Positions 10,722 through 61,211 of a stretch of 64,000 bases of DNA are shown one piece after another (the first letter of the stretch is position 1; each line of letters begins with the position of its first letter). The DNA is taken from positions 1-64,000 of the IMG/VR virus record IMGVR_UViG_3300032931_001151; one strand, given 5' to 3'. The translations under genes were made by a program, and so were the position numbers. A model generated the notes under the pieces. That model saw only the letters and a program-made list of their open reading frames with translations. It searched no databases and had not been told where the DNA came from.

Positions 10722-10766
10722 ATTATAATGAGTTATTAAGATTGTCAAGACGAAATCTTATAAATA
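10722..10766. promoter_or_regulatory. Divergent promoter pair: early TTGACA-N15-TATAAT (-, 10722-10748) and late TATAAATA (+, 10759-10766)
   Basis: Motifs read directly at the strand switch. Confidence 0.8.
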
Positions 10767-10786: not shown

Positions 10787-10978
10787 ATGGACTCCGACAA
10801 ACTAATGAATGAATTGAAGAAGGCTTGGATTAAACTTGACAATTCATTGGTAGCCCGTACACCTATAGAGGGACCTGCGATGGTTGAAGAAACCCCCAAA
10901 GAGGAACCCGAAGCACAACAAATAGCGGATAACCTAAGAACTCACTCAAAAGACATTCGTTTAGGCGATTTTAACTAA
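10787..10978 (+). CDS. Small late protein (putative head-internal protein)
   Basis: Start moved to the ATG at 10787 after the late promoter and AAGGA; ELKKAW motif. Confidence 0.65.
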   Translation: MDSDKLMNELKKAWIKLDNSLVARTPIEGPAMVEETPKEEPEAQQIADNLRTHSKDIRLGDFN

Positions 10979-10989
10979 AAGGACATAAA

Positions 10990-11451
10990 ATGTATCATAA
11001 TATAGAAGACCAAGATAAACTTAAGACACTTGAAGCAGCTTGGAGACAAGTTAATGAAACTAATACTAATGCAATAGAAACTTCTATAATAGAAGTATTT
11101 AATGCTTGCCCAATTGAAAATATTAAAATAGTTGCACATGATGTAGGAGAACAACAAGTTGAAGATGGCCCTTCAGCAACTTGGAATATATATAACATAG
11201 TAGTTCAACTTCCTATTGAATTACAAGGAAAATTAAAAGAATTCAATGATGTTGAAATTGACAATTCTCTTAAATCTCTATTAAATGCTCACTCAGAGAA
11301 AATAGGACAATTTATTCAAAATATTACAGATCTTATCAATGAAACCATAGGAAGTGTTGAAGACGTTGCTTTTGATAAAATTCAAGGAGAAGTCTTCATT
11401 AAAGTATATGGGGAACATAATGTTGGTGGTAATGAAATGGACTATGTTTAA
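10990..11451 (+). CDS. Acidic late protein (putative virion or internal protein)
   Basis: LEAAWRQVNE near the N-terminus; in the late operon. Confidence 0.65.
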   Translation: MYHNIEDQDKLKTLEAAWRQVNETNTNAIETSIIEVFNACPIENIKIVAHDVGEQQVEDGPSATWNIYNIVVQLPIELQGKLKEFNDVEIDNSLKSLLNAHSEKIGQFIQNITDLINETIGSVEDVAFDKIQGEVFIKVYGEHNVGGNEMDYV

Positions 11452-11633
11452 TGGTAAACAACGATAATATAGTTTTTAATGTTAAAGAAGATGATGCTCA
11501 TAGCATTGTCTATCTTCACCATGGAAAAGTTATCGTTGCGGTTGGAAGTGATAAATACGATGCAATAGAAAAACTAAATGCACAAATAGCAATAGAAGAA
11601 AGTAGAGAAGACAATGATACTTACAGAAGATAA
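11451..11633 (+). CDS. Hypothetical protein
   Basis: TAATG coupling. Confidence 0.55.
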   Translation: MVNNDNIVFNVKEDDAHSIVYLHHGKVIVAVGSDKYDAIEKLNAQIAIEESREDNDTYRR

Positions 11634-12156
11634 ATCCGATTCAATTTGTTATATGATTCGAGTTGATAAAGCAACCGAAGATAAACTAATTGCCATGCAA
11701 AAAGAACTAGGATTAAAAGGTGAGTTAGAAGATAAATTTCATACTACTATAAGATACATAACGACTAATAAGTCGCCCGATATGCTTATAGGATTCCTTG
11801 AAGGTAGTAAATTGCCTACTTTAAAAGGAAAGATATATGGATTTGACATATTTGGTCCAACTAAAGATACTTTAGTTCTAAGACTTGAATCAAAAGAAAT
11901 TAACGATTGGTTTAATAGATTTGATAAGTTTGCTATAAAGAATGGATATCCAAAATCTAAATATCCGACTTATAAGCCACATATATCGTTAACAATTGAC
12001 CCCGATATTGTTAAACCTAAATGGAAAGATAAGTATGCATTTGAGGTTAAGTTCAATATACATGTTGTTAGTAAGAACTATAAAGATATTTGGGTTAAAG
12101 ATGCTACTAAAATATCTTTAAAAGAATCTATAATAGAAACATTCATAAAAAGTTAA
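11614..12156 (+). CDS. 2H phosphoesterase, Acb1/T4 gp57B-like (candidate anti-CBASS nuclease)
   Basis: Two HxT/S motifs, KFHTTIRY and YPTYKPHISL, in a context like gp57B (HSTICY / YTPHITL). Confidence 0.75.
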   Translation: MILTEDKSDSICYMIRVDKATEDKLIAMQKELGLKGELEDKFHTTIRYITTNKSPDMLIGFLEGSKLPTLKGKIYGFDIFGPTKDTLVLRLESKEINDWFNRFDKFAIKNGYPKSKYPTYKPHISLTIDPDIVKPKWKDKYAFEVKFNIHVVSKNYKDIWVKDATKISLKESIIETFIKS

Positions 12157-12166
12157 AGGAAATAAC

Positions 12167-13153
12167 ATGGACGATAATACATACGAACTAGCCAAGGCTT
12201 GGAAACAAATTGAAGAGAACTTGGTTCAATCGGTTAATCTTAATCCGGAAATGAATGAGAATGCGTTTAACTTTAATGTAGTTAAAAAGCAACTTGACGA
12301 TTTATATACAAATGTTGGCAAATCGGCTCAAAGTGCCGAATTTGCTGGAAATGATGTGTGGCTAATTTCCGGAAACTATCCTTTAAAAAACATAGGAGCA
12401 TCGGCTATCTTCATATATGCTAATGATGATGTATATAGAGGTAGTGATACTTTTGATTTATTTAAGAGAGTCGTTCTACCTTCCACCGAATATGAAGATG
12501 CTACACTTGAGAGCGGATCTATTGAAGAAGTACTTAGTAAAGCACAAGAGATAAATGTCGGAAAGGCACTTAAAGAAGTTGATTCTCCCGATGAAGCCAT
12601 TGCTAGAAGAGATAGAGATGAACAATCTAAGAACAACTTAAAAACTATTAAATTAGATGGACGAGTTGCCGATTTACTTGATATGAATATGAAGGAAATG
12701 GGTAATACGGAGTGGACCGATGGATATCAAGGTGATGGGCCATATCTACCCAAAGAAGTTGAAGACTATATACTAAATGCTATTGGTAATGATACCGAAG
12801 AACCATTTAAGGTTAGATTCATCAAATACGGATCATCAAGCCCATTAGAAGGTCGTGGAAGCCCCCTTTATGTTGAATATGAACAAGAAACTACCCCAGG
12901 ACATACCGAGTTTGGATTAAGAGATATGACCGAGCAAAGCGAATTGCCAATTGGAGAATTACATAAGTTAGTTAAAGTAAACGATTTAGGTAGTACTATT
13001 GACATTAGTTTTGGAATTGTTAGAATAGCAACAATTGAGCAAGAAGAGGCTGGGTGGGATATTTACATCCACGGGAAGCCACTTGCCGTTACTTATAATA
13101 CAAAGGAAGATGCCTTTACGGCACTTGTTAATTATCTAAATGATGAGAAATAA
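12167..13153 (+). CDS. Acidic late protein (putative internal head protein)
   Basis: ELAKAWKQIEE at the N-terminus; several [ILM]-x-E sites. Confidence 0.65.
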   Translation: MDDNTYELAKAWKQIEENLVQSVNLNPEMNENAFNFNVVKKQLDDLYTNVGKSAQSAEFAGNDVWLISGNYPLKNIGASAIFIYANDDVYRGSDTFDLFKRVVLPSTEYEDATLESGSIEEVLSKAQEINVGKALKEVDSPDEAIARRDRDEQSKNNLKTIKLDGRVADLLDMNMKEMGNTEWTDGYQGDGPYLPKEVEDYILNAIGNDTEEPFKVRFIKYGSSSPLEGRGSPLYVEYEQETTPGHTEFGLRDMTEQSELPIGELHKLVKVNDLGSTIDISFGIVRIATIEQEEAGWDIYIHGKPLAVTYNTKEDAFTALVNYLNDEK

Positions 13154-13901
13154 AATATTACAATATTTCATAGAAGGTAAAACTGCTGGGGATAAGTACG
13201 GGGATTTTGTAATTCAAAATGGGAAGATGTTATTTAATAGAGTGGGCGGATTGGGTGCTAAATATCAAGACAATACATGGGCACCCGAAAAAAGAGGAAT
13301 TTGGGCATTTCCATATCCTTTATTTGAATCATTTTTTATAAGTGGTCCATTTAGTATGCCTTCCCAACATAGTCCTAAAAAGTCAAAAATAGTAAAAATT
13401 GATTCAAAATTAAGAAATCAATTAGAGAAAAGACTAAGAGGATTAAAAACAAAAATGGAAATCGGTATATCAAAATTAAAATCAACCGAAGATAACCCAT
13501 TCCCAAAATATTTTGGTCACGAAAAATATGAAATTGAAGATTTAGAAAAAGCATTAAAAGATGGTGAAATAGATTCAATTAAATTAAGTTCTTCAATGAA
13601 ACATAAGTATAAACCAACAAATAAAATTCGTAGATTTTATTGGGGTGGCCCAATTTGGGCAAGATTTGCACCAAAAGGAGAAGAAGTTACTGAAAATGGT
13701 TGGTACAAATATGATGATATATATAGTTATATCAAAGAATTAAGAAAATATTTATTTGAGTGGAGAAGAGATTCATTATATGGAAGTAAAGATAATAAAG
13801 GAATTTTGTATAAGATAGGAGTTCCAATAGCATCTAAAGATGCTAACATGAGCATGGATCATTTGGAAGTATTTTTACCTATGAGCGGAAATCGTGACTG
13901 A
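13140..13901 (+). CDS. Late hypothetical protein with the shared N-terminal motif
   Basis: MRNKILQYFIEG. Confidence 0.7.
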   Translation: MMRNKILQYFIEGKTAGDKYGDFVIQNGKMLFNRVGGLGAKYQDNTWAPEKRGIWAFPYPLFESFFISGPFSMPSQHSPKKSKIVKIDSKLRNQLEKRLRGLKTKMEIGISKLKSTEDNPFPKYFGHEKYEIEDLEKALKDGEIDSIKLSSSMKHKYKPTNKIRRFYWGGPIWARFAPKGEEVTENGWYKYDDIYSYIKELRKYLFEWRRDSLYGSKDNKGILYKIGVPIASKDANMSMDHLEVFLPMSGNRD

Positions 13902-14205
13902 AATTCAACATCTATACGATAGAGCAACTAAAATTCTAACTAATATAGAATGTATAAAGTCTATTACTCAAAAAATTATTGATGAAAAAGAAATGGGAAT
14001 CAAAATAGATAAGAAAGAAATTCTTAATTTAGCAAGTATAATAAAACAACTTATGGAAAGATATAATGCTATTCTTGAATGTATTGCTAAATCGCATATA
14101 TCATTTGAAGAGAAAGAAACTATTATGGATATGCTAGATACTTCTAGAAAATCTATAATGTCACTTAATAATGCTATTAATGTGGTTCAAAAAAAGATTA
14201 TTTAA
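13894..14205 (+). CDS. Hypothetical coiled-coil protein
   Basis: GTG start overlapping the upstream gene. Confidence 0.6.
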   Translation: MTEIQHLYDRATKILTNIECIKSITQKIIDEKEMGIKIDKKEILNLASIIKQLMERYNAILECIAKSHISFEEKETIMDMLDTSRKSIMSLNNAINVVQKKII

Positions 14206-42430: not shown

Positions 42431-42477
42431 ATTATAGTGCCAACAACGAAAAGTCAATCAATAAATTTTGATAAATA
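42431..42477. promoter_or_regulatory. Divergent promoters: early TTGACT-N15-TATAAT (-, 42431-42457) and late-like GATAAATA (+, 42470-42477)
   Basis: At the strand switch. Confidence 0.7.
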
Positions 42478-42491
42478 AGGTTGAGGTAATT

Positions 42492-43160
42492 ATGTCACTA
42501 AGAAATAAAATAATTAATTTATTTGAGGCTCATGACTTGTTTGATCAACAAGGAAGTATTAATGTGGACCACGGAGAAATCGGAAATAGAGATCAAATGG
42601 GTAGTATGTGGCATTCTTATCCAAGCATTGATTATGCCATGCTTGAAGATGGAGAAAAACCAAGAATATACATTGATATGGATAGTGTTTTATGCGATTT
42701 TGTTAAATCTTTCAAAGAAAAAGTCGGAATTTCCCCCGAAGAGTATGAAGCAACTAACGGAAAAAATGCTTTTTGGGATATTATAGAGTCTTGGGGAGAG
42801 GATTTTTGGGAAACTCTACCGTGGATGCCAGATGGAAAAGAACTTTGGAATTATGTATCTAAATATAATCCCATAATACTATCTGCTGCAATGGCTGGAT
42901 ATCAAAGAAGAGGAAAATCAAAGTGGCTTCAAAAAGAAATAGGATATTCCGATACTCCTATAGTTAATCCAAGTAATTGGAAAGGCCAATCTAAAGTAAT
43001 ATTTCATAAAGACAAATGGAGATTTATTCTAGAAAAAAACGAAATATTAATTGATGACACCGAAAGCAAGATTGAACCTTGGCACGATAATGGCGGAATC
43101 GGTATACTTCACACATCCGCTAAAAATACTATAGAGTATTTGAAAAAAATTGGATTATAA
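42492..43160 (+). CDS. HAD-family 5'(3')-deoxyribonucleotidase with an N-terminal late-protein extension
   Basis: IYIDMDSVLCDF, FWETLPWMPDG, ILS, K, ILIDD; start at the ATG 42492 after GAGG (MSLRNKIINLFEA). Confidence 0.85.
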   Translation: MSLRNKIINLFEAHDLFDQQGSINVDHGEIGNRDQMGSMWHSYPSIDYAMLEDGEKPRIYIDMDSVLCDFVKSFKEKVGISPEEYEATNGKNAFWDIIESWGEDFWETLPWMPDGKELWNYVSKYNPIILSAAMAGYQRRGKSKWLQKEIGYSDTPIVNPSNWKGQSKVIFHKDKWRFILEKNEILIDDTESKIEPWHDNGGIGILHTSAKNTIEYLKKIGL

Positions 43161-43163
43161 ATA
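43156..43163 (+). promoter_or_regulatory. T4-type late promoter TATAAATA
   Basis: About 20 nt upstream of the ATG at 43183. Confidence 0.7.
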
Positions 43164-53648: not shown

Positions 53649-54434
53649 TCATCCATTTAGCGGATACTTAGAGATATCAAAAGTATTTTCTCCAAGCGGA
53701 ATATGTGACATTCCGTTATAGTTATGGATGATATAAGATTGAACTATATTTGATACAAATGAATTAACTTTATCATAATCCGGCTTTTCCGGAAGTTTTG
53801 AAGATGCAAAAGCATCATTCATTTCATTGATATTGTTATTAAGGAAAGATAAACATTCCTCTTTAGTATAATCATAATTTCTCATTTTGGAAACAATATC
53901 TTTATCAACCCCCTTAAGAGTTGGGTCAAGTTTTCCTTCCGACATTAGCATAACGCATTGTTTAGCTAGACGATATGCATTTGATGCAAACTTTCCGTCA
54001 TAACCATAAGTATCAAATAAATCTTTCCTCTTACCTACACGAATAGAAGTGGTGAATTCTTTTATTTGACTATAGTGATAATTGAAAAATGGAAGAAATA
54101 GATGCTTTGTTATCATATTATCACGAACAAATCTAGCAACTATTTCCCCAATCGGAGTAGTATGTAAAACAAATTTTGAATCGGCACAAAATGGCTCCAA
54201 AATTGTTGGATTTCCTTTAAAAAGTAAATTGAAGCATCTACGAACTTCATAAATAGTCCCATTAAAATTTTCATTGCCTAGTTTCCCATTTGAATAGTCT
54301 TGTTGCTCTTTGGATTTTAGTCCACAATATTCGTCAATTTCATTGAGGCCGACGCCTTTTACGTCAAAATCCGAGTCATCCTTATTAGTACCATAAAGGC
54401 GGGATCCAACGATAGCAATGTAAATGGGTTTCAT
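53649..54434 (-). CDS. Pol-beta-superfamily nucleotidyltransferase (RlaP/PF10127-like)
   Basis: VGSRLYGTN...SDFDVKGV, GNPTILE, GYDGK.A..A.RL. Confidence 0.85.
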   Translation of the reverse strand: MKPIYIAIVGSRLYGTNKDDSDFDVKGVGLNEIDEYCGLKSKEQQDYSNGKLGNENFNGTIYEVRRCFNLLFKGNPTILEPFCADSKFVLHTTPIGEIVARFVRDNMITKHLFLPFFNYHYSQIKEFTTSIRVGKRKDLFDTYGYDGKFASNAYRLAKQCVMLMSEGKLDPTLKGVDKDIVSKMRNYDYTKEECLSFLNNNINEMNDAFASSKLPEKPDYDKVNSFVSNIVQSYIIHNYNGMSHIPLGENTFDISKYPLNG

Positions 54435-60005: not shown

Positions 60006-61211
60006 ATGTCTCTTCAAGATTATCTAACAAAGTATTTTCCCAACGGTCCTATTGGTGAATTTGAAAGCCAAAAATGTGAAATTATTTCACATTTCATAGA
60101 TCGTTTTGGTGTCAATGTGAAAAATGTAGGGAATTTATATCTATTTAAATATGATCAACTATTAGTTAAATTTACTATTCCATTAACAAAGGAATGCCGT
60201 GGCCATATTTATCAATATATAAATGGCAATTGGTTGCGAGTATGTAATGCTATGGATAAATTTTGGAATTTTGACGAAGGATTTTGTCCTATCTTTGAGG
60301 AATCAGAATTTCAACAATATATAAACCAAATTGAACTAAAAAATAAAGAAGATGGTAGTCTTATACATCTTTATTGGCTTGAAGATCAACAAAAGTGGAA
60401 TTTATCCACTTCAGGTTCAATTGTGTGTTTTACCGTTGGAGATTCGTCGCTCACTTTTGACCAACTATTTTGGAAGACACTTAATAAAGATGTTACCGAG
60501 TTTACTTCTAAACTTGATAAAAACTACGTTTATATTTTTGAATTATGCTCAACTCTTAATCAAATAGTGTCTATGTATAAAAATGATAGAATTTATCTAT
60601 TAAACGTTCGCCATAACCGATATGGCACATATCTTCCTATTGATTCTATTGCTCAAGAGTTGGGTCTTCTTATTCCAACTTCAACTTTCCTATATCAATT
60701 AGATATTAATACTAAAAATGATATGGTAATGTGGGTTGAAAAAAATTGCGTTGACGATGTTGATTGTAAGAATAAAGAGGGATTCGTTGGTTATATCAAT
60801 GGGGTTCCATCTTTTAAGATTAAAACCAATCGTTATAAGTTCTTACACTCATTCAAAGGTAATAACGAGAAAGAGACTCGTAATAACATCATTGATGCTT
60901 ATTTCACCGATACTATTGACGATGTTTATAATGACCTCCACGAATCAAGCAAAATGTTTGTTGAATCATTAAGAATCAAAGTATTAAACCTTCTAAATGA
61001 TGTCAATTTGGCAATCGTCAAAATGAATGGCTTGAAATTTGAAACCCAAAAAGAATATGCGTTATTTGTGATTGCGAATACTCCTAAAATGGTAAATGGG
61101 TTCTTTTTCGCCAATAAGGAAATAATTCTTAAGAGTGAAGGTATTACCGAATTATTTACCAATTGGATTAAGCAACATCATAAAAAATATGAAGATTATT
61201 GGAAATCTTAA
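60006..61211 (+). CDS. RNA ligase, T4 Rnl1-like
   Basis: LFKY, ECRG, DKFWN..E, motif I KEDGSLI, FEL, EGFV, FKIKT..Y. Confidence 0.88.
   Translation: MSLQDYLTKYFPNGPIGEFESQKCEIISHFIDRFGVNVKNVGNLYLFKYDQLLVKFTIPLTKECRGHIYQYINGNWLRVCNAMDKFWNFDEGFCPIFEESEFQQYINQIELKNKEDGSLIHLYWLEDQQKWNLSTSGSIVCFTVGDSSLTFDQLFWKTLNKDVTEFTSKLDKNYVYIFELCSTLNQIVSMYKNDRIYLLNVRHNRYGTYLPIDSIAQELGLLIPTSTFLYQLDINTKNDMVMWVEKNCVDDVDCKNKEGFVGYINGVPSFKIKTNRYKFLHSFKGNNEKETRNNIIDAYFTDTIDDVYNDLHESSKMFVESLRIKVLNLLNDVNLAIVKMNGLKFETQKEYALFVIANTPKMVNGFFFANKEIILKSEGITELFTNWIKQHHKKYEDYWKS

What the first reader, a model, noticed from the sequence alone, without database searches (positions are those of the whole stretch)
11614..12156. 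Acb1-like 2H phosphoesterase in a late, putative virion-cargo operon
Seen: HTT and HIS motifs, a position in a late operon, N-terminal MILTE and a C-terminal motif-like tail. Known: T4 gp57B/Acb1 degrades CBASS cyclic nucleotides. Inference: a packaged and injected anti-CBASS enzyme would act from the moment of infection. The neighbouring late unit's 5'-nucleotidase (42492) also has the leader, suggesting nucleotide-degrading enzymes are delivered in the head.
Basis: partly seen in the sequence, partly recalled or inferred. Interest (0 to 1): 0.6.

Follow-up and report, generated by a model that had tools for sequence, protein, structure and literature searches.

The report
Late-expressed Acb1 nuclease among leader-tagged genes
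A giant T4-like phage encodes an enzyme of the family that destroys bacterial CBASS alarm nucleotides; the gene is switched on late and sits among genes whose products share a head-packaging-type tag, which hints, but does not show, that such enzymes can travel inside the virus particle.

Summary
The ORF at 11614-12156(+) is real. It encodes a 180-aa 2H phosphoesterase that passes Pfam's Acb1 threshold (47.7 vs 27 bits), has the H-x-T / H-x-S pair (H43/T45, H123/S125) and folds like solved Acb1.

The genome is a 214-kb uncultivated T4-like phage. The T4 late-promoter octamer heads the seven-gene plus-strand island, so "late operon" holds.

The "leader" claim needs correcting:
- MILTE is only a five-residue tail with an L-x-E protease-type site.
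- The 5'-nucleotidase shares nothing with it.

Other evidence does point to head targeting in this locus:
- Three other island genes (10787, 10990, 12167) share a ~20-residue N-terminal leader found nowhere else in the genome. It mostly ends in [ILM]-x-E.
- Acb1 orthologues in related phages carry this leader or a T4 capsid-targeting-like one.
- An ADP-ribosyltransferase-fold family, one member encoded beside a capsid gene, carries either leader at the same position.
- T4's own acb1 abuts ipI.

The island therefore looks like an internal-protein hotspot. Acb1 was probably head-targeted ancestrally, and this copy has lost the targeting part.

Best reading: a late, cytoplasmic anti-CBASS nuclease. 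Packaging of this copy is possible (Alt's six-residue propeptide is a precedent) but unproven.

The parts
10759..10766 (+). T4-type late promoter octamer TATAAATA heading the plus-strand island
   Evidence: It lies 20 nt upstream of ATG 10787. It is the only visible plus-strand promoter.
10787..10978 (+). 63-aa acidic protein with the shared N-terminal leader (W-type)
   Evidence: Leader profile 31.9 bits. Orthologue at L004:5520.
10990..11451 (+). 153-aa acidic protein with the shared leader
   Evidence: Leader profile 30.1 bits. No Pfam or PHROG family.
11451..11633 (+). Conserved 60-aa ORF directly upstream of Acb1, overlapping it by 20 nt in another frame
   Evidence: A 55-aa orthologue sits in the same place in L004 and L005. 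Function unknown.
11614..12156 (+). Acb1-family 2H phosphodiesterase, 180 aa, pI 9.1
   Evidence: Pfam PF23474 at 47.7 bits (cut-off 27). PDB sequence search finds only Acb1 7t26. AF2 pLDDT 82. Foldseek top hit is 7t26.
11614..11628 (+). N-terminal tail M-I-L-T-E (L-x-E, the site type cut by the gp21 prohead protease), disordered in the model
   Evidence: E5 is invariant and L/F3 is kept in 14 of 14 clade members, while residues 4 and 6-8 vary. pLDDT is below 50 for residues 1-7. The tail aligns with the end of the full leader in the L003 and L007 orthologues.
11740..11748 (+). First catalytic motif H43-T-T45
   Evidence: Aligns with T4 Acb1 H44/T46.
11980..11988 (+). Second catalytic motif H123-I-S125
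   Evidence: Aligns with T4 Acb1 H113/T115. Ser replaces Thr in this clade.
12079..12093 (+). Y156-K-D158-I-W160, the likely counterpart of the T4 Acb1 Y139-K-E141 ... W147 lid region
   Evidence: Y, K, D and W nearly invariant. The W160/W147 equivalence is inferred from the motif, not from the alignment.
12118..12153 (+). Clade-specific C-terminal amphipathic helix (residues 169-180), containing I-I-E
   Evidence: It is absent from the L003, L007 and T4 proteins. The E of I-x-E is kept in only 10 of 14.
12167..13153 (+). 328-aa acidic protein with the shared leader ending I-E-E
   Evidence: Leader profile 32.7 bits. In 7 of 8 family members the leader ends [ILM]-E-E. No known fold or family.
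13140..13901 (+). 253-aa basic protein without the leader, absent from relative L004
   Evidence: Function unknown.
13894..14205 (+). 103-aa protein, last gene of the island, conserved in L004

Best explanation
ORF 11614-12156 encodes an Acb1-family 2H phosphodiesterase of an uncultivated 214-kb T4-like phage.

It is transcribed late, from the TATAAATA promoter at 10759, as the fourth of seven tightly packed genes.

By homology it should bind 3'-5'-linked cyclic di- and trinucleotides that contain adenosine (3'3'-cGAMP, cUA, cA3). It would open them by metal-independent acid-base catalysis with H43 and H123, with T45 and S125 holding the phosphate. This would remove the CBASS second messenger before it activates the effector.

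Late synthesis puts the enzyme in the cell when the phage's own prohead protease, a reported CBASS trigger in T4, becomes active.

The surrounding island is an internal-protein-like hotspot: three of its genes carry a shared N-terminal leader of the capsid-targeting type. This Acb1 copy keeps only the last five residues of such a leader, so it most likely works in the cytoplasm of the cell that makes it rather than as injected cargo.

Shown here: ORF, family membership, catalytic motifs, fold, promoter motif and its genome-wide behaviour, and the leader and its distribution.

Inferred: substrate, timing, leader function, and non-packaging of this copy.
For: Family:
- Only Pfam Acb1 matches, above its curated cut-off.
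- Only Acb1 is found by sequence in the PDB.
- A BLAST chain links window -> L009 -> Acinetobacter phage 57B -> T4 57B.
- Key residues are kept: H43/T45, H123/S125, F80, Y117, Y120, Y156 and D158.

Late unit:
-.
- The same octamer precedes the Acb1 islands of L003, L004, L008 and L009.
- The genome has the T4 gp23 capsid protein and the S77 protease.

Timing logic:
- T4 Acb1 activity appears at about 15 min (PMC9117128).
- CBASS is triggered by gp21 from 14 min (PMC12991175).

Leader:
- Profile members score 27-36 bits and the next best in the genome scores 8 bits. The leader is always at the extreme N-terminus, on unrelated protein bodies.
- The window's Acb1 gives no hit.
Against: - No enzymology, transcript data or virion proteome exists for this phage.
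- The aromatic equivalent of T4 Y12 and the lid Trp are not cleanly aligned.
- E5 and the hydrophobic residue at position 3 are conserved inside an otherwise variable, disordered tail. This suggests the tail still does something, possibly protease processing as in T4 Alt. That would favour the packaging rival.
Confidence: 0.55

Rival explanations
1. One reading: this Acb1 is itself packed into the prohead, trimmed after M-I-L-T-E by the gp21-type protease, and injected with the DNA. It would then degrade cyclic-nucleotide signals from the first moment of the next infection.
For: - T4 Alt, a packaged and injected enzyme, has a six-residue propeptide M-E-L-I-T-E cut at ITE-6 and a C-terminal cut at LTE-619 (PMC5694885).
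- E5 is invariant, with L/F at position 3, in a disordered tail.
- Orthologues in L003 and L007 carry the full island leader. Those in L008 and L009 have N-termini of T4 capsid-targeting type ending I/L-N-E.
- T4 acb1 lies next to ipI, and its first seven residues resemble the IPI leader, with aromatic residues at positions 4 and 7.
- The genome encodes an S77 protease.
Against: - The targeting determinants of the T4 leader are residues 4 and 7, and the processing determinants are 8 and 10 (PMC9026906). MILTE keeps only a processing-type site.
- The leader profile does not match this protein.
- [LI]-x-E is frequent in this genome, 1.2% per residue.
- In T4 no Acb1 activity is seen before about 15 min.
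- No held paper reports gp57B in virions.
- CBASS fires late, so early delivery is not needed.
Confidence: 0.25
2. It is a 2H enzyme with another job. Candidates are healing or processing RNA ends alongside the phage's RNA ligase and RNA-repair nucleotidyltransferase, or targeting other signals such as type III CRISPR cyclic oligoadenylates rather than CBASS.
For: - PHROG 755 is labelled 'RNA ligase'.
- The window holds an Rnl1-type ligase (60006-61211) and an RlaP family protein (53649-54434).
- Viral 2H enzymes have diverse substrates (bioRxiv 10.1101/2025.08.21.671373).
Against: - No LigT-type Pfam family matches even at E <= 1.
- The 'RNA ligase' label is the legacy name given to T4 57B homologues themselves.
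- Acb1-specific residues outside the His motifs are retained.
- The gene is not adjacent to the RNA-repair genes.
Confidence: 0.12
3. The shared N-terminal leader of the neighbouring genes is not a head-targeting signal. It would be another common module, such as a docking helix for a host or phage partner, or simply a remnant of local gene duplication. In that case the island is a late accessory operon with no link to the virion.
For: - No proteomic evidence exists.
- The canonical I/L-x-E is absent after the leader in some members: window 10787, L004:5520, L004:6554 and L024:1483.
- The island proteins are acidic, unlike basic T4 IPII and IPIII.
- The similarity to the capsid protein N-terminus is not statistically significant.
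Against: - The same leader sits on at least six unrelated protein bodies in four phages, always at residue 1 and after late promoters.
- In one ADP-ribosyltransferase-fold family the leader alternates with a T4 CTS-like leader at the same position, both ending [LIV]-x-E. One member is encoded directly after gp23 in the head module.
Confidence: 0.25

Closest known systems
Acb1 (T4 gp57B; Erwinia phage FBB1 Acb1, PDB 7T26/7T27)
   Same: - 2H fold and the H-x-T/S pair.
- Aromatic and acidic ligand-contact positions are largely kept.
- Found in a T4-type phage and expressed late.
- It lies beside genes for leader-bearing proteins, as T4 57B lies beside ipI.
   Different: - About 20-22% identity only; BLAST cannot link it to T4 directly.
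- It is 28 residues longer.
- It has H-x-S in the second motif, a shorter Y-K-D-x-W segment, and an extra C-terminal helix.
- It is not next to a 57A chaperone gene.
T4 internal proteins IPI-III and their capsid targeting sequence; the T-even ip hotspot
   Same: Applies to the neighbours at 10787, 10990 and 12167:
- Unrelated protein bodies share only an N-terminal leader.
- Late promoter.
- The leader mostly ends in I/L-x-E.
- Variable gene content between relatives (PMC12373910, PMC9026906).
   Different: - The leader is about 17-20 residues, built around L-x3-W-x2-[LIM], rather than the 10-residue aromatic T4 leader.
- The proteins are acidic.
- Packaging is untested.
- The Acb1 in this window lacks the leader.
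T4 Alt (packaged ADP-ribosyltransferase)
   Same: Alt has a very short N-terminal propeptide of the same type as MILTE, and an enzyme is delivered in the head. Relatives of this phage have an ADP-ribosyltransferase-fold protein carrying the island's leader.
   Different: - Alt's propeptide has not been shown to be the targeting signal.
- Alt also loses 63 C-terminal residues.
- No such ADP-ribosyltransferase gene was found in this window.
Burkholderia phage BCSR5 2H PDE-9 (PDB 9Q2G/9Q2Y)
   Same: Same structural group as Acb1 and a close structural match. It shows that an N-terminal segment of a viral 2H enzyme can serve as the lid.
   Different: 14-15% identity. No evidence that residues 1-8 here fold over the active site; they are disordered in the model.
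LigT / bacterial and archaeal 2'-5' RNA ligase-like CPDases
   Same: Same fold and His motifs; tied structural scores.
   Different: No sequence-profile match. These are cellular enzymes acting on RNA ends.

Membership tests
Acb1 (PF23474) | Profile match above the curated gathering score | tested here: met
   47.7 bits vs 27, E 1.7e-12, residues 15-149 on profile positions 7-131 of 144. All 16 close homologues carry the same precomputed family.
Acb1 (PF23474) | 2H phosphoesterase fold | tested here: met
Acb1 (PF23474) | HxT/HxT catalytic tetrad (T4 H44, T46, H113, T115) | tested here: met
   H43, T45, H123 and S125; Ser replaces the last Thr.
Acb1 (PF23474) | Base-stacking aromatics (T4 Y12, W74, F107, W147) and the adenine-reading acid E141 | tested here: inconclusive
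   F80, Y117 and D158 align. Y13 or R16 for Y12, and W160 for W147, depend on how the alignment is read.
Acb1 (PF23474) | Flexible C-terminal lid needed for catalysis | tested here: inconclusive
   A conserved Y-K-D-x-W segment is followed by an extra helix. Lid behaviour cannot be judged from a static model.
Acb1 (PF23474) | Cleaves 3'3'-cGAMP, cUA and cA3, and protects the phage from CBASS | not testable with these tools
   Needs enzymology and plaque assays.
T4-type head-internal (CTS-bearing) proteins | N-terminal leader shared with other, unrelated proteins of the same phage | tested here: not met
   For Acb1 itself, the leader profile gives no hit and only five residues precede the core. 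The feature is met by neighbours 10787, 10990 and 12167 (27-36 bits) and by the Acb1 orthologues in L003 and L007.
T4-type head-internal (CTS-bearing) proteins | I/L-x-E site for the prohead protease at the end of the N-terminal segment, and such a protease in the genome | tested here: met
   L3-T4-E5 with E5 invariant. S77 protease at genome 146562-147269.
T4-type head-internal (CTS-bearing) proteins | Late transcription | tested here: met
   TATAAATA at 10759, with genome-wide positional enrichment. This is a sequence inference, not expression data.
T4-type head-internal (CTS-bearing) proteins | Physical presence in the virion and ejection into the host | not testable with these tools
   No proteome exists. 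No sequencing run was listed.
LigT / 2'-5' RNA ligase families | Profile match to a LigT-type family | tested here: not met
   No such Pfam family matches at E <= 1.

The most novel reading that the evidence does not exclude
Acb1 is, in many T4-type phages, a head-internal protein. On this reading it is targeted to the prohead by an N-terminal leader, trimmed by the prohead protease, and injected with the DNA as a pre-made eraser of cyclic-nucleotide immune signals. The leader would be either the classical aromatic T4 type or a newly seen L-x3-W-x2-[LIM]-x-E type that echoes the first residues of the major capsid protein. The five-residue MILTE tail of this copy would then be an Alt-like minimal propeptide rather than a dead remnant.
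Probability: 0.25. Interest if true: 0.75.

Novelty: new variant of a known kind. Interest (0 to 1): 0.55.

Why it matters
Acb1 is the prototype anti-CBASS nuclease and has been treated as an enzyme made and used inside the infected cell.

Several observations make a concrete, cheap question testable: are anti-signalling enzymes part of the injected protein arsenal of T4-type phages?
- The Acb1 gene is embedded in an internal-protein-like hotspot.
- Orthologues are fused to capsid-targeting-type leaders.
- T4's own gene lies next to ipI with a leader-like start.

The analysis also defines a second leader type. That leader could be used to mine uncultivated jumbo T4-like phages for injected counter-defence proteins, most of which (three in this window) have no known function.

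If the leader is not a packaging signal, the finding reduces to one more divergent Acb1 homologue under late control. That is ordinary.

Tried and rejected
- DNA and protein BLAST of the window's Acb1 region against cultured phages found nothing. The link to T4 needed profiles and an intermediate sequence.
- A fusion or frameshift joining the upstream 60-aa ORF to Acb1 was rejected. The two ORFs are in different frames here and in the same frame, separated by a stop, in L004, so no recoding signal is conserved.
- Homology between the window's 5'-nucleotidase and the nucleotidase-like gene beside Acb1 in L007 was rejected.
- ESM Atlas look-ups of the 328-aa and 253-aa neighbours gave no usable hit. 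Pfam and PHROGs gave nothing for five island proteins.
- The leader profile scored against the capsid protein N-termini gave -0.7 bits. The resemblance is visual only.
- The search for sequencing runs listed none, so no reads were laid.
- A second scan of viral contigs for more T4-type Acb1 genes mostly returned unrelated 2H domains, including two inside very large multidomain proteins.
- Repoila et al. 1994 was not held.

Full report
**The object.**
- Window 11614-12156(+) is one 180-aa ORF. An in-frame stop at 11593-11595 leaves ATG 11614 as the only possible start.
- Pfam gives a single match, Acb1 (PF23474): 47.7 bits against a curated cut-off of 27. No LigT-type family appears even at E <= 1.
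- A sequence search of the PDB finds only Acb1 of phage FBB1, 7t26.
- An AlphaFold model built on 16 homologues has pLDDT 82. Residues 1-7 are disordered and a helix covers residues 169-179.
- Foldseek ranks 7t26 and 7t27 first, at E 7e-7 and 22% identity.
- Aligned through intermediates to T4 gp57B, the catalytic tetrad is H43/T45 and H123/S125. F80, Y117, Y120, Y156 and D158 occupy positions of T4 ligand-contact residues described by Hobbs et al. (PMC9117128). The equivalents of Y12 and the lid Trp are ambiguous.
- A BLAST-level chain links the window to L009 (33%), L009 to Acinetobacter phage 57B homologues (E 5e-6), and these to T4 57B (44%).

**The genome and the "late operon".**
- The window is the first 64 kb of a 214.2-kb, 32.8% GC virus record.
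- It encodes a T4 gp23-type capsid protein and an S77 prohead protease in a T4-ordered head module.
- Its capsid protein is only about 35% identical to the nearest cultured phages, which are cyanophages.
- TATAAATA, the T4 late-promoter consensus, is not over-represented in number but is in position. Of 40 copies, 22 lie 4-45 nt upstream of the first ATG of an ORF on the same strand, against 8.2% for 55 same-composition octamers. Head genes are among those preceded by it.
- One copy sits at 10759-10766, 20 nt before ATG 10787. It stands at the head of a seven-gene plus-strand island (10787-14205) set into a long minus-strand block, with strand and GC skew flipping there.
- No sigma-70-like plus-strand site lies upstream.
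- The Acb1 genes of four relatives also sit in small islands or operons preceded by the octamer.
- "Late" is therefore well supported by sequence, though no expression data exist.

**The "leader".**
- MILTE is five residues. An [LI]-x-E this close to the start is rare in this genome (3 of 269 ORFs), but the motif is common overall. It occurs within the first 20 residues in 18% of ORFs, which covers the 5'-nucleotidase's L-F-E at residues 11-13. The two N-termini share nothing else.
- The unexpected result is that three other island genes (10787, 10990, 12167) share a real leader. It has an acidic start, then L-x3-W-x2-[LIMV], usually followed by x-E.
- A profile built from nine examples scores members at 27-36 bits, and the next best hit in the whole genome scores 8 bits. 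Every match starts at the initiator Met, and the protein bodies are unrelated.
- In the 328-aa family, 7 of 8 leaders end [ILM]-E-E.
- The two Acb1 orthologues at about 50% identity (L003, L007) carry this leader in front of the catalytic core. The window's MILTE aligns with the leader's last residues.
- More distant orthologues in confirmed T4-type genomes (L008, L009) instead start with an aromatic-x-x-aromatic ... I/L-N-E segment, like the T4 leader MKTYQEFIAE.
- With leader-bearing outgroups, the simplest history is loss of the targeting part in the window's clade.

**Is the leader a head-targeting signal?** This is inferred, not shown. Four lines point that way.
1. It fits the published definition of T-even internal proteins: no similarity apart from an N-terminal packaging leader, clustering in a hotspot, and cleavage at I/L-x-E (PMC9026906, PMC12373910).
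2. In T4 the gene order is 57A-57B(acb1)-ipI. T4 Acb1 begins with a heptad resembling the IPI leader, with aromatic residues at positions 4 and 7, the reported targeting determinants.
3. In the 332-kb relative G003 the profile finds further late-promoter genes. One of them is a 317-aa protein with an ADP-ribosyltransferase fold (pLDDT 88; Foldseek hits to ADP-ribosyltransferase catalytic subunits, Tpt1 and DarT). Its 29 aligned homologues carry either the W-type leader or a T4-like aromatic leader at the same position, both ending [LIV]-x-E immediately before the conserved body. One member is encoded directly after gp23 in a portal-protease-scaffold-capsid module. The analogy with T4 Alt, the packaged ADP-ribosyltransferase, is close.
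4. Capsid protein N-termini of T4 and four relatives share L-x3-W-x-P-[LM]. The leader may imitate the capsid protein's own core-binding start, but this similarity is not statistically significant.

**What this means for the Acb1 in the window.**
- For packaging: T4 Alt has a six-residue propeptide, MELITE, removed at ITE-6, and a C-terminal cut (PMC5694885). E5 and the hydrophobic residue at position 3 are invariant in 14 clade members while neighbouring tail positions drift.
- Against packaging: the targeting half of the leader is gone. The C-terminal I-x-E is kept in only 10 of 14. T4 Acb1 activity is first seen at about 15 min. CBASS in T4 infection is triggered by the prohead protease from 14 min, so late cytoplasmic synthesis is sufficient.
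- An N-terminal lid, as in PDE-9, is another possible reason for tail conservation.
- I put packaging of this copy at about one in four, and of the leader-bearing orthologues at somewhat better than even.

**Novelty.**
- The enzyme is a divergent new member of a family already found in about 1,500 cultured phage records.
- The held literature does not describe three things seen here: its embedding in a leader-defined hotspot, Acb1-leader fusions in relatives, and the W-type leader itself.
- An ejected anti-CBASS protein of another kind has been reported (bioRxiv 10.1101/2025.07.23.666291, listed, not read).

Noticed in passing
T4 record AF158101, L006:2592-3411 (minus strand): T4 acb1 (57B) lies directly upstream of ipI. 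Its first seven residues resemble the IPI leader, with aromatic residues at positions 4 and 7 but no I-x-E. This could mean that T4 Acb1 itself is head-targeted but not processed.
   Followed up: partly
G000 143997-145352(-); L035, L036, L037:6549; T4 L013:946: The major capsid proteins of this phage, three relatives and T4 all start with L-x3-W-x-P-[LM] within the first 16 residues. This is the same spacing as the W-type leader. The profile score is not significant.
   Followed up: partly
L003:7988-8003, L018:1828-1843, L037:7987-8003: In three relatives TATAAATA is followed after only 5-6 nt by the ATG of a leader-bearing gene. That leaves no room for a Shine-Dalgarno sequence, so these may be leaderless late mRNAs starting at the AUG.
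   Followed up: no
L024:1019-1468 (G003): A 149-aa late-promoter gene has two H-I-T motifs (residues 52 and 110) and a leader-like N-terminus with Tyr in place of Trp. It sits next to a 78-aa leader-bearing gene. It may be a second, miniature 2H enzyme; no Pfam family matches.
   Followed up: partly
L018:1841-2794 (G003) and L037:8001-9512: An ADP-ribosyltransferase-fold phage protein family carries interchangeable N-terminal leaders. One member is encoded right after the capsid gene. It is a likely Alt analogue in distant T4-type phages.
   Followed up: yes
window 10722-10748 (minus strand): A perfect TTGACA and TATAAT with a 15-nt spacer point away from the island towards the minus-strand genes. 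This is probably the early promoter of the divergent block; the spacer is shorter than the scan's 16-18 nt.
   Followed up: no
window 42468-43160 and 43156-43163: The deoxyribonucleotidase-like gene (phrog_2643) heads a plus-strand structural block. Its upstream box is GATAAATA, one mismatch from the late consensus. A perfect TATAAATA inside its last codons precedes the 1069-aa virion structural protein gene.
   Followed up: partly
window 53649-54434(-) and 60006-61211(+): An RlaP-family RNA-repair nucleotidyltransferase and an Rnl1-type RNA ligase are present. These RNA-repair functions could be confused with the role of a 2H enzyme.
   Followed up: no
L030 and L034 (viral contigs): 2H phosphoesterase domains with the Y-P-x-[YF]-K-P-H motif are embedded in 1,500-aa multidomain phage proteins of the polyvalent type, a class proposed to be delivered with the DNA.
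   Followed up: no
L015:2459-3082 (Citrobacter phage Miller): Miller's 57B homologue is 207 aa. It has a T4-leader-like start and a 55-residue C-terminal extension, so Acb1 termini are plastic in cultured T4-like phages too.
   Followed up: no
G000 record: IMG/VR labels this 214-kb T4-type genome 'provirus' (90% complete). Nothing in the window suggests integration; the label is probably a classification artefact.
   Followed up: no
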